Notes: generated by a model not told the origin, from the letters alone. A DNA stretch of 63,499 nt, filler included, from Bigelowiella natans CCMP2755 (GCA_000320545.1; 6 parts of 6 records of this genome joined end to end with filler, not necessarily neighbours in it), one strand, 5' to 3'; numbered from the whole stretch's first letter, positions 47,391 to 48,801 are shown. Numbers and translations are program-made.

Positions 47391-48529
47391 CTATGGAATG
47401 CGAATCCAGACTCCGTCAGGGACAAAGCTGTCAGTCTTATCTCTAAGTACGTTTTTGGTAGAATATAGAAATACCTCAAGTGCTACCACATTCTCTTTTG
47501 TTGTCACCATTTTACCTGAGATATATGCATATTATGTCTCCAACTGCAGGATCTTGAGGAACGTGCTGAAAAACCCTACGGAACCAAAGTTCAGGAAGAT
47601 CAAACGGTGACAGATTGATTTACGGAGTGATGGCCTGTGTGCGGATAAATGAGCAAAGTACTCATTATGTACTGCTATGTCATCACTTATATTTACTACA
47701 GCACTGCAATCGACAAGCGGCTGAATGGTGTTCGCGGCGCTCTTCAAATCCTCTCCTTTGCGGGGTTCCAAGTGGTAGTGCACAGAAACATTTTGTGCAT
47801 AGGCCTTGTAGGAACTTGCTGATATCTTTTCATGGTCTATTTATTTAGAGTGGCGAGCATTATGTTTTGCCTGAGACTTGTGAGCTATCGAATCTTGTGG
47901 ATGTTGTAGAGGTACGACATGACATTTCAAGTTCCATGCGATTCTCGCACTGTGCAATTTCAACAGTATTTCAACACCTCACGTGGAAAAATGTTCAAGC
48001 CAATGTTTCCCACCACATTTAGAAATGTACTCTATAATTTGAACACGGAGTTATTGTGAGAGTGACACTGTTAGTGTAGATCCTGAAACAAAATCTCATC
48101 TAACAGTCTTGTATTCTAACTTTTTACCTGACGTATCCAGGTATTTGACAAAAAAGCGAAGGATAGAGCTGAGGCAGAAGCGAAGTTGCAGGAAATCCTT
48201 GCGAAGAATAATAAGAAAGCAAAAGCCGAAATGGACAAGAAGGAGGCGCATCGTAAAAAGGTACGTGGTGTATGTCATAGTCACATGTATCTACATATGT
48301 GTATTTTTACCCTTTTTCCTGATTCTTTTCGTGAGGGAGGGGTGAAATATTTAAAGATCGCGAATATATTTCAATCCAAGAATTCGTGTAGATTCGTGCG
48401 GAACAGCAGCAAGCTCAAAAGGAGGTTAAGGATAAGATAATCATCTCGTCCAAGGCCAACAAGATCAACTTTGGAATGAAGCTGAAGAAATTTGAGCCTC
48501 CAAAGGAACAGAGAGGAGGGTGAGGTTAA
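47391..48529 (+). CDS. PUB-domain protein with a C-terminal GG-[UGA]-G-stop motif; putative selenoprotein (5' exons probably extend to about 46951)
   Basis: PUB motif RILRNVLKNPTEPKFRKIK..RLNGVRGALQILSFAGFQ, then a coiled coil. The last exon (48392-) reads ..SSKANKINFGMKLKKFEPPKEQRGG TGA(48521) GGT TAA(48527-48529). Confidence 0.85.
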
Positions 48530-48530
48530 T

Positions 48531-48649
48531 GGGGTCAATCACCCATTATGATTCAAAACCAAACAAGGACATTAAGTGCCAGGGTATTGGACGACCGACG
48601 CACCTGCTTCTTTTGTCGTTTGGAAATGTGAATCATAATGATTGACCCC
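48531..48649 (+). promoter_or_regulatory. Long stem-loop beginning 7 nt after the in-frame UGA (SRE/proximal-stem-loop-like)
   Basis: GGGGTCAAT/ATTGACCCC (9 bp), CATTATGATTCA/TGAATCATAATG (12 bp) and CCAAAC/GTTTGG (6 bp) pair in nested order. Confidence 0.75.
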
Positions 48650-48751
48650 GCCACGGTGTTGCACGAAAATAGTTGTTTTTAAGATGCAAAACACCTCATA
48701 TCTACTGAGCATCCGTGATAAACTCTTCTTCAAGTATATGAGGGAGACGAT

Positions 48752-48801
48752 ATGAAGCTCATAGGCCTAAAATTGAAAGTCGAAAAGACCTATCTGCTGA
48801 G
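48752..48801 (+). promoter_or_regulatory. Putative type II SECIS element
   Basis: Core AUGAA(48752)...UGAG(48798); 12-nt helix II GCUCAUAGGCCU/AGACCUAUCUGC (9 of 12 pairs); unpaired AAAA at 48769; apical mini-stem UUGA-AAG-UCGA. Helix I is weak by eye. Confidence 0.72.

What the first reader, a model, noticed from the sequence alone, without database searches (positions are those of the whole stretch)
47391..48801. PUB-domain protein with GG-UGA-G-UAA terminus plus SECIS-like element: candidate new selenoprotein family linked to p97/Cdc48
Seen: the last exon reads ..EPPKEQRGG-TGA-GGT-TAA. About 230 nt downstream is an element with SECIS geometry: AUGA core, 12-nt helix, unpaired AAAA, apical mini-stem and closing UGAG. 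Established: SELENOS (ends GGUG*) and SELENOK (ends GGUGR*) carry Sec in this Gly-rich near-terminal context and act with p97/VCP in ERAD, and PUB domains bind the p97 C-terminal tail. Inference: UGA 48521 encodes Sec, giving a p97 adaptor (no TM seen in the resolved exons) with a SelS-like redox tail recruited through a PUB domain. Standard annotation would truncate it at GG. I do not know of a described PUB-domain selenoprotein.
Basis: partly seen in the sequence, partly recalled or inferred. Interest (0 to 1): 0.9.

Follow-up and report, generated by a model that had tools for sequence, protein, structure and literature searches.

The report
PUB-domain selenoprotein with SelS-like tail
This expressed Bigelowiella natans gene encodes a small PUB-domain (p97/Cdc48-binding type) protein whose apparent UGA stop is almost certainly selenocysteine, giving a ...GG-Sec-Gly end like human selenoprotein S, but a "PUB" selenoprotein family is already listed for algae.

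Summary
The last exon reads GGA GGG TGA GGT TAA (TGA 48521-23), and a SECIS-shaped element lies at 48752-48802, inside the mRNA (poly(A) tail at 48876).

Comparative evidence supports Sec:
- All nine lineages for which I obtained DNA keep TGA at this position. These are six chlorarachniophyte-type lineages (about 50-70% protein identity) and three from an AT-rich clade (about 30%).
- Eight have exactly one more codon and then a stop: Gly as GGT or GGC, or Arg as CGT. One has TGA TAA.
- Every 3'UTR holds an (A/G/U)UGA-N12-14-AAA...GA stem-loop that few or no shuffles match.
- Seven of the nine fold a clear hairpin right after the stop, like the proximal stem-loop of human SelS.

The protein is 179 aa: a PUB domain, one long helix, and a disordered tail ending GG-U-G. 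It has no membrane segment. The public JGI model splices around the TGA, and the other public predictions stop at GG.

Caveats:
- Rfam's SECIS models match none of the elements.
- No Cys homologue was found.
- p97 binding is inferred only.
- Jiang et al. 2020 already list a "PUB domain-containing protein" selenoprotein family in algae and count 23 selenoproteins in B. natans.

I therefore call this a new, well-documented member of a known kind, not a new family.

The parts
47112..47210 (+). Exon 1: 5'UTR and the first 11 codons (ATG at 47178; MSSQGARLVRE)
   Evidence: RNA contigs X1 and X19 start near 47112-47117, and the joint 47210/47391 has GT..AG ends. The exon translation equals residues 1-11 of P0002.
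47391..47446 (+). Exon 2 (start of the PUB domain)
   Evidence: Joints. The translation is found in P0002 at residues 12-29.
47550..47606 (+). Exon 3 (PUB core motif NVLKNPTEPKFRKIK)
   Evidence: Joints. Pfam PUB covers residues 21-90 of P0002.
47702..47774 (+). Exon 4 (PUB domain)
47849..47911 (+). Exon 5 (end of the PUB domain)
48141..48260 (+). Exon 6 (first part of the long Lys/Glu/Ala-rich helix)
   Evidence: The AlphaFold2 model has one helix over residues 87-160.
48392..48529 (+). Coding part of the last exon: end of the helix and the disordered tail ...KKFEPPKEQRGG-Sec-Gly-stop
   Evidence: The tail is conserved in orthologues.
48521..48523 (+). UGA read as selenocysteine, followed by GGT (Gly, 48524-26) and TAA (48527-29)
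   Evidence: TGA is present in the DNA and in RNA contigs with no variant. TGA is kept in 9 of 9 lineages with DNA.
48531..48653 (+). Long, nearly perfect hairpin that starts 7 nt after the UGA (1 nt after the TAA). It is analogous to the proximal stem-loop of the SelS 3'UTR.
   Evidence: -53 kcal/mol, z -4.7. Orthologues carry a hairpin at the same place with a different sequence. A strain variant changes A to G in the 3' arm but keeps the pair as U.G.
48752..48802 (+). SECIS element, type 2: AUGA 48752-55, helix II, AAAA 48769-72, mini-stem with triloop, GA 48799-800
   Evidence: The same architecture, (A/G/U)UGA-N12-14-AAA...GA, occurs in all eight other orthologous UTRs.
48850..48876 (+). 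Two overlapping AATAAA signals (48850-59) and the poly(A) addition site at 48876
   Evidence: 25 raw RNA reads carry an untemplated A-run after 48876, and X1's contig ends at 48872.

Best explanation
The gene (47112-48876, + strand, 7 exons) of Bigelowiella natans encodes a soluble 179-residue selenoprotein. It has an N-terminal PUB domain, one roughly 74-residue helix, and a disordered Lys/Pro-rich tail ending Gly-Gly-Sec-Gly. UGA 48521 is recoded to selenocysteine by the type-2 SECIS at 48752-48802 in the 3'UTR. A stable hairpin that begins 7 nt after the UGA probably tunes recoding or spacing, as the proximal stem-loop does in human SelS mRNA.

Shown here:
- the transcript structure and the poly(A) site;
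- the PUB fold;
- conservation of UGA, one codon and a stop across nine lineages;
- SECIS-like elements in all nine lineages;
- hairpins just after the stop, clear in seven lineages and weak in two.

Inferred:
- The PUB domain docks the protein on the C-terminal tail of Cdc48/p97.
- The flexible tail presents a lone selenol. The chlorarachniophyte proteins have no conserved Cys, so the chemistry would be SelK-like. The AT-rich clade has a Cys 9-15 residues upstream, which would be SelS-like.
- Products that terminate at the UGA end in -GG, which in mammals is a degradation signal for truncated SelS and SelK.
For: (1) The mRNA is real and includes all elements. Spliced RNA contigs from several studies cover it, and the poly(A) tail is at 48876.

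(2) TGA is kept in every lineage with DNA:
- window, L001, L003, L008: TGA GGT TAA
- L006: TGA GGC TAA (a synonymous change in the Gly codon)
- L002 and L012: TGA CGT TAA
- L013: TGA GGT TAG
- L007: TGA TAA
. The rest of the 3'UTR cannot be aligned between species.

(3) SECIS-like elements are found in all nine UTRs. Shuffles that reach the observed energy: 8/200 (window), 0/200, 3/200, 9/200, 7/200, 0/200, then 1/300, 0/300, 0/300. L007 and L012 share one element in which three pairs differ by one-sided U.G/U-A changes that keep pairing.

(4) Hairpins follow the stop, with z from -4.5 to -5.7 in five lineages, -2.9 in L007 and -1.6 in L003.

(5) The PUB domain is confirmed by Pfam (E 4e-13), by PDB profile hits to PNGase and UBXD1 PUB domains, and by Foldseek (2HPL_A, TM 0.85).

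(6) B. natans is reported to have 23 selenoproteins, and 'PUB' is a named algal selenoprotein family (PMC7539508).

(7) SelS ends ...SSGGUG and has a proximal stem-loop at nt 3-36 of its 3'UTR. Six of eight human selenoproteins with a C-terminal Sec have such a stem-loop (PMC6844570).

(8) The JGI model avoids the TGA with an invented intron (P0016), a typical selenoprotein mis-annotation.
Against: - Rfam's SECIS covariance models gave no hit at E<=10 in the window's UTR or in three orthologous UTRs.
- The window's own SECIS has a weak helix II with two adjacent mismatches, is absent from the unconstrained fold, and is only marginal against shuffles (8/200).
- My SECIS scan was written after I had seen the first examples.
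- The Amorphochlora element has U rather than A or G before the UGA core.
- No Cys-containing homologue was found. The Gymnochlora protein (P0004) ends ...PRRK and I could not get its DNA.
- The Sec machinery could not be checked in this 23.7-kb piece.
- There is no protein-level evidence.
- Relative to PNGase, the PUB domain has a two-residue gap where the PNGase sequence reads ...IRIGN..., so p97 binding is not assured.
Confidence: 0.87

Rival explanations
1. UGA 48521 is an ordinary stop and the protein ends ...RGG. The conserved GGUUAA and the hairpin would be a 3'UTR element, for example a tandem back-up stop plus a stability or localisation hairpin. The AUGA...AAA...GA stem-loops would be chance.
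For: No Rfam SECIS hit in any UTR tested. The window's SECIS is weak. All database proteins are predicted to end at GG.
Against: Nine of nine lineages use TGA, including three genomes with 24-30% GC where TAA would be expected. The second stop sits at a fixed distance, with a synonymous GGT/GGC change in between. SECIS-like elements beat shuffles in all nine UTRs. The tail matches known Sec tails.
Confidence: 0.07
2. The UGA is read through by a near-cognate tRNA (Trp, Cys or Arg), stimulated by the hairpin 7 nt downstream. This would add two residues without selenium.
For: The hairpin's spacing resembles known readthrough stimulators, and hairpins are conserved at this place.
Against: A two-residue extension with a variable second residue has no obvious value without Sec. 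SECIS-like elements are present throughout. The organism is reported to make selenoproteins. In SelS the similar stem-loop is not a readthrough stimulator.
Confidence: 0.04
3. Sec is inserted, but the functional SECIS is not the reader's element. It would lie in the long hairpin 48531-48653, which contains AUGA (48548), AA 13 nt later, and a GA on the 3' arm.
For: My scan lists AUGA 48548 / GA 48630 with -17.2 kcal/mol.
Against: In the hairpin the AUGA is fully Watson-Crick paired with UCAU, so no G.A kink-turn can form in register. The orthologous hairpins have no AUGA. Orthologues have their SECIS-like element after the hairpin.
Confidence: 0.02

Closest known systems
'PUB' (PUB domain-containing protein) selenoprotein family, listed for algae by Jiang et al. 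2020, BMC Genomics 21:699 (PMC7539508)
   Same: A selenoprotein with a PUB domain in algae. B. natans was one of the 36 genomes analysed (23 selenoproteins). [quoted passage not shown]
   Different: The held text gives no sequence, Sec position, species list or SECIS for this family. I therefore could not confirm that it is this gene or this architecture. The first description, possibly the Aureococcus papers, is not held.
Selenoprotein S (SELENOS/VIMP)
   Same: A C-terminal ...GG-Sec-Gly-stop. A long helix followed by a disordered tail. A stem-loop directly after the stop codon. A link to p97 (SelS binds it through a VIM motif). Truncated products end in -GG.
   Different: No N-terminal membrane segment. 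No Pfam or sequence match to SelS. The p97-binding module would be a PUB domain rather than a VIM. The chlorarachniophyte proteins have no Cys partner for the Sec.
Selenoprotein K (SELENOK)
   Same: A Gly-rich disordered tail with a lone Sec close to the end and no resolving Cys. GGUGR in SelK is from my own knowledge; here the ends are GGUG or GGUR.
   Different: SelK is a small membrane protein with no PUB domain. There is no sequence similarity.
PUB-domain p97 adaptors (PNGase/NGLY1, UBXD1/UBXN6, HOIP/RNF31)
   Same: The same fold and core motif. The best structural match is the PNGase PUB domain crystallised with the p97 C-terminal peptide.
   Different: Those are large multidomain proteins without Sec. 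This one is PUB, a helix and a Sec tail only, and it has a two-residue gap in one loop relative to PNGase.

Membership tests
Eukaryotic selenoprotein (UGA recoded by a 3'UTR SECIS) | In-frame UGA conserved among orthologues, with the coding frame continuing after it | tested here: met
   TGA in 9 of 9 lineages. In 8 it is followed by one codon (GGT, GGC or CGT) and a stop, and in 1 directly by TAA.
Eukaryotic selenoprotein (UGA recoded by a 3'UTR SECIS) | SECIS element within the mature 3'UTR (NUGA core, helix II, unpaired AA, 3' GA) | tested here: inconclusive
   Met by a pattern-plus-energy scan in all nine UTRs, with shuffle controls, and the element lies upstream of the poly(A) site. Not met by Rfam's SECIS models. 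SECISearch3 was not available.
Eukaryotic selenoprotein (UGA recoded by a 3'UTR SECIS) | Sec machinery (tRNA-Sec, eEFSec, SBP2, SPS, SecS) in the genome | not testable with these tools
   Only a 23.7-kb piece is available. The literature reports 23 selenoproteins in B. natans (PMC7539508).
Eukaryotic selenoprotein (UGA recoded by a 3'UTR SECIS) | Cys-containing homologues aligned to the Sec | tested here: not met
   None among the proteins found. The family may be Sec-only, as the paper reports for SELENOK and SELENOS. The Atlas shows clusters of PUB proteins of about 185 aa in fungi and molluscs that I could not inspect.
Eukaryotic selenoprotein (UGA recoded by a 3'UTR SECIS) | Selenium shown in the protein (75Se labelling or mass spectrometry) | not testable with these tools
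   This needs an experiment.
PUB domain (Pfam PF09409) | Profile match above the curated cut-off, and the PUB fold | tested here: met
   49.5 bits against a cut-off of 34.3, residues 21-90. PDB profile E 2.8e-8 to the PNGase PUB domain. Foldseek 2HPL_A, TM 0.85, rmsd 1.5 A.
PUB domain (Pfam PF09409) | Binding of the p97/Cdc48 C-terminal tail | not testable with these tools
   Inferred from the family. There is a two-residue gap relative to PNGase in one loop.
Selenoprotein S family (Pfam Selenoprotein_S) | Sequence or profile similarity to SelS | tested here: not met
   No such Pfam hit for the whole protein at E<=0.01, or for exons 6 and 7 at E<=10.
Selenoprotein S family (Pfam Selenoprotein_S) | N-terminal membrane anchor | tested here: not met
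   The highest 19-residue hydropathy mean is 0.85. The model is a PUB domain plus an amphipathic or charged helix.
Selenoprotein S family (Pfam Selenoprotein_S) | C-terminal GG-Sec-Gly and a stem-loop just after the stop | tested here: met

The most novel reading that the evidence does not exclude
A soluble PUB-domain adaptor and the membrane protein SelS would have arrived independently at the same module: a long helix, a disordered tail ending GG-Sec-Gly, and a stem-loop right after the stop. Each would be attached to a different p97/Cdc48-binding device (PUB versus VIM). That would mean the Sec tail is a portable functional unit of Cdc48/p97 biology rather than of the ER membrane. It would also mean the post-stop hairpin is an ancient, general aid for decoding C-terminal Sec codons, conserved from Rhizaria to mammals.
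Probability: 0.3. Interest if true: 0.75.

Novelty: new member of a known kind. Interest (0 to 1): 0.5.

Why it matters
The role of the Sec in SelS and SelK is still unclear. A second, unrelated p97-adaptor scaffold carrying the same GG-Sec-Gly tail, in a culturable alga, offers an independent system for asking what that tail does at Cdc48/p97. The hairpin just after the stop, clear in seven of nine lineages, parallels the SelS proximal stem-loop and could be tested as a general feature of C-terminal Sec decoding. In practical terms, the public models of this gene are wrong (JGI Bigna1 90496) or truncated (MMETSP ORFs, the Amorphochlora 'hypothetical protein') and can be corrected.

Tried and rejected
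1. Rfam SECIS models on the window and on three orthologous UTRs gave no hit.
2. A covariance model built from the single best SECIS (L001) found none of the other elements, with or without filters. It was too sequence-specific.
3. MAFFT alignments of the SECIS candidates align the 5' strands (NUGA, 13 nt, AAA) but not the 3' strands. No joint model or pair count could be built.
4. The long hairpin as the SECIS was rejected, because its AUGA is Watson-Crick paired.
5. I first read the L001 element as the window's element with its apical part deleted. This was rejected once L001 was folded.
6. A scan of metagenome contigs for more orthologues returned only a B. natans-like transcript.
7. Exon-wise Pfam searches found nothing because the exons are too short. 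The PUB assignment comes from P0002, which matches every exon exactly.
8. The papers that may first describe the PUB selenoprotein (Gobler et al. 2011 and 2013) are not held.
10. No repeat or transposon copy of the 3'UTR exists elsewhere in the piece.

Full report
**What is in the window.** The finding's sequence is exactly as described...AGA GGA GGG TGA GGT TAA, with TGA at 48521-23 and TAA at 48527-29.

Public RNA data give the gene structure. Spliced contigs from several studies, together with raw reads, define seven exons:
- about 47112-47210
- 47391-47446
- 47550-47606
- 47702-47774
- 47849-47911
- 48141-48260
- 48392-48876

All introns are GT..AG. Twenty-five raw reads carry an untemplated A-run after 48876, 17-21 nt past two overlapping AATAAA signals. 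The RNA contigs show no variant at the TGA. After the UGA the mRNA has 353 nt, which contain everything discussed below.

**Whose gene it is.** I did not type or join the spliced protein. Instead I searched with the last exon alone, and that search led to full-length database proteins.
- One of them, P0002 (177 aa, MMETSP/JGI), matches every exon of the window exactly and in order.
- Its 90% cluster contains the Bigelowiella natans JGI model Bigna1 90496. The window is therefore B. natans, a chlorarachniophyte alga (Rhizaria).
- That JGI model (P0016, 197 aa) leaves the frame at ...RGG and continues in another frame. It has invented an intron to get past the TGA.
- All other public predictions simply stop at GG.

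**The protein.**
- Pfam finds a PUB domain at residues 21-90 (E 4e-13, above the curated cut-off).
- A family profile hits the solved PUB domains of PNGase and UBXD1 (E 2.8e-8).
- An AlphaFold2 model (mean pLDDT 83) has the PUB fold at 4-79, a single helix at 87-160 and a disordered tail from 160.
- Its best structural match is the PNGase PUB domain crystallised with the p97 peptide (2HPL_A, TM 0.85, rmsd 1.5 A).
- There is no membrane segment.

**Is the UGA selenocysteine? Comparative test.** I obtained DNA for eight further lineages:
- L001, a transcript from an unnamed relative
- L002, Amorphochlora amoebiformis genome
- L003, an unnamed, compact, intronless genome with 57% GC
- L006, MMETSP1318
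- L008, Lotharella globosa
- L007, L012 and L013, three members of a distant AT-rich clade with about 30% protein identity

Every one has TGA at the aligned position:

| Lineages | Sequence from the TGA |
|---|---|
| window, L001, L003, L008 | TGA GGT TAA |
| L006 | TGA GGC TAA |
| L002, L012 | TGA CGT TAA |
| L013 | TGA GGT TAG |
| L007 | TGA TAA |

So the stop codon type never changes, even in genomes with 24-30% GC. A second stop follows at a fixed distance. The codon in between changes synonymously (GGT/GGC) or to Arg. The rest of the UTR cannot be aligned between species.

**SECIS.** Taken alone it is weak. Its upper stem is -7.8 kcal/mol, it is absent from the free minimum-energy fold, and 8 of 200 shuffles match it.

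The same architecture, (A/G/U)UGA, 12-14 nt, unpaired AAA(A), then a closing GA, is present 55-272 nt after the UGA in all eight other UTRs. It is usually much stronger there.

| Locus | Core | Energy (kcal/mol) | Shuffles as good |
|---|---|---|---|
| L001 | AUGA | -19.8 | 0/200 |
| L008 | AUGA | -13.0 | 0/200 |
| L002 | UUGA | -13.0 | 3/200 |
| L006 | GUGA | -12.4 | 7/200 |
| L003 | AUGA | -8.6 | 9/200 |
| L007 | GUGA | -5.9 | 1/300 |
| L012 | GUGA | -5.9 | 0/300 |
| L013 | GUGA | -9.9 | 0/300 |

- L007 and L012 share one recognisably homologous element. Three of its helix pairs differ by U.G/U-A changes that keep the pairing.
- A G before the core and long mini-stems are accepted features of algal SECIS elements (PMC2375036).
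- Against this, none of the elements is found by Rfam's SECIS models.
- My scan was also designed after I had seen the first cases.

I therefore score the SECIS criterion as inconclusive by the formal test but convincing in aggregate.

**A second conserved RNA feature.** Seven of the nine lineages fold a clear stem-loop starting 6-7 nt after the UGA, which is 0-2 nt after the second stop. The sequences are unrelated.

| Locus | z-score |
|---|---|
| window (48531-48653, -53 kcal/mol) | -4.7 |
| L001 | -5.2 |
| L002 | -5.7 |
| L008 | -4.7 |
| L006 | -4.5 |
| L007 | -2.9 |
| L003 | -1.6 |

- Between the window and L001 the stem differs by the paired loss of one C-G pair.
- A B. natans strain variant changes a U-A pair to U.G.
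- The hairpin is weaker in L012 and L013.
- It is not the SECIS. Its AUGA is fully Watson-Crick paired, and the orthologous hairpins have no AUGA.
- Human SelS mRNA has a conserved proximal stem-loop at nt 3-36 of its 3'UTR. Six of eight human selenoproteins with a C-terminal Sec can form one, and in SelS it acts mainly through spacing (PMC6844570).

**Mechanism.**
- Shown: the transcript, the PUB fold, the recoding signature and the RNA elements.
- Inferred from the established role of PUB domains: the protein docks on the C-terminal tail of Cdc48/p97, and its long helix holds out a flexible tail ending in a selenol.
- The chlorarachniophyte proteins have no conserved Cys, so the Sec would act alone, as in SelK. 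In the AT-rich clade a Cys lies 9-15 residues upstream (P0026, P0028), which recalls the Cys/Sec pair of SelS.
- Failed decoding would leave a -GG end. In mammals such ends on truncated SelS are degradation signals read by Kelch-type ligases (PMC7090344). Whether that applies here is untested.

**Novelty.** Jiang et al. 2020 (PMC7539508) list 'PUB: PUB domain-containing protein' among 42 algal selenoprotein families. They claim only three others as new, and they call PUB one of the least widely distributed families. They also count 23 selenoproteins in B. natans.

The held text gives no sequences, and the probable original sources are not held. I therefore cannot say whether this exact gene is already recorded.

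I file it as a new, well-documented member of a known kind. The features not found in the text I could read are:
- the identity of the tail with SelS;
- the conserved hairpin after the stop;
- the spread across chlorarachniophytes and two other lineages;
- the apparent lack of Cys forms.

**Limits.**
- There is no protein-level evidence.
- The Sec machinery was not checked in this genome.
- Gymnochlora's orthologue ends ...PRRK, and I could not get its DNA.
- The taxa of L003 and of the AT-rich clade are unknown.
- The spliced protein was never joined from the window. P0002 was used instead.

Noticed in passing
window 46000-46708 (- strand): A highly expressed, spliced thioredoxin-fold gene (WCPPC motif; Pfam Thioredoxin/Thioredoxin_8). 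It is transcribed divergently from the PUB gene, and only about 400 bp separate the two 5' ends. The pairing is not conserved in Amorphochlora or in L003.
   Followed up: partly
window 40761-42470 (+ strand): A 569-aa ORF with an N-terminal coiled-coil-like region and Kelch repeats. It has a sub-threshold match (46.7 bits against a cut-off of 50) to the KLHDC2/KLHL20/DRC7 Kelch domain. In mammals KLHDC-type ligases recognise the -GG ends of truncated SelS and SelK. This is probably coincidence.
   Followed up: partly
window 48521-48575 (JGI model Bigna1 90496 = P0016): The public gene model jumps from ...RGG to another frame (TLSARVLDD...), so it has invented an intron to avoid the TGA. The MMETSP ORFs and the NCBI Amorphochlora 'hypothetical protein' are truncated at GG.
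   Followed up: yes
L012 and L013 (proteins P0026, P0028; also P0025, P0027): In the distant AT-rich clade a Cys lies 9-15 residues before the predicted Sec (for example FGMCEKK..., GANVCKFEP...). This recalls the Cys/Sec pair of SelS. Chlorarachniophytes have Lys at that position.
   Followed up: partly
L007 731-736: In this lineage the TGA is followed directly by TAA (...GGC GGC GGA AAA AGA TGA TAA), so the Sec would be the very last residue. A SECIS-like element homologous to that of L012 lies 77 nt downstream.
   Followed up: partly
window 55552-56547 (- strand): A single-exon homocysteine S-methyltransferase (Pfam S-methyl_trans, E 7e-55). From my own knowledge, this family also contains selenocysteine methyltransferases.
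   Followed up: no
window 57512-58308 (- strand): A CCT-motif (CONSTANS-type) protein next to long poly-Q/poly-S coding stretches. (CA)n and (GA)n microsatellites lie at about 52600-54300.
   Followed up: no
window 49484-49989 (- strand): Another expressed gene on the opposite strand, with an intron at 49765-49908. Its 3' end faces the 3' end of the PUB gene.
   Followed up: no
Atlas clusters: Clusters of PUB-domain proteins of about 185 aa, some named 'Fragment', are reported with members in Basidiomycota, Mollusca and Haptophyta. They could hold Cys forms or further truncated Sec forms of this family.
   Followed up: no
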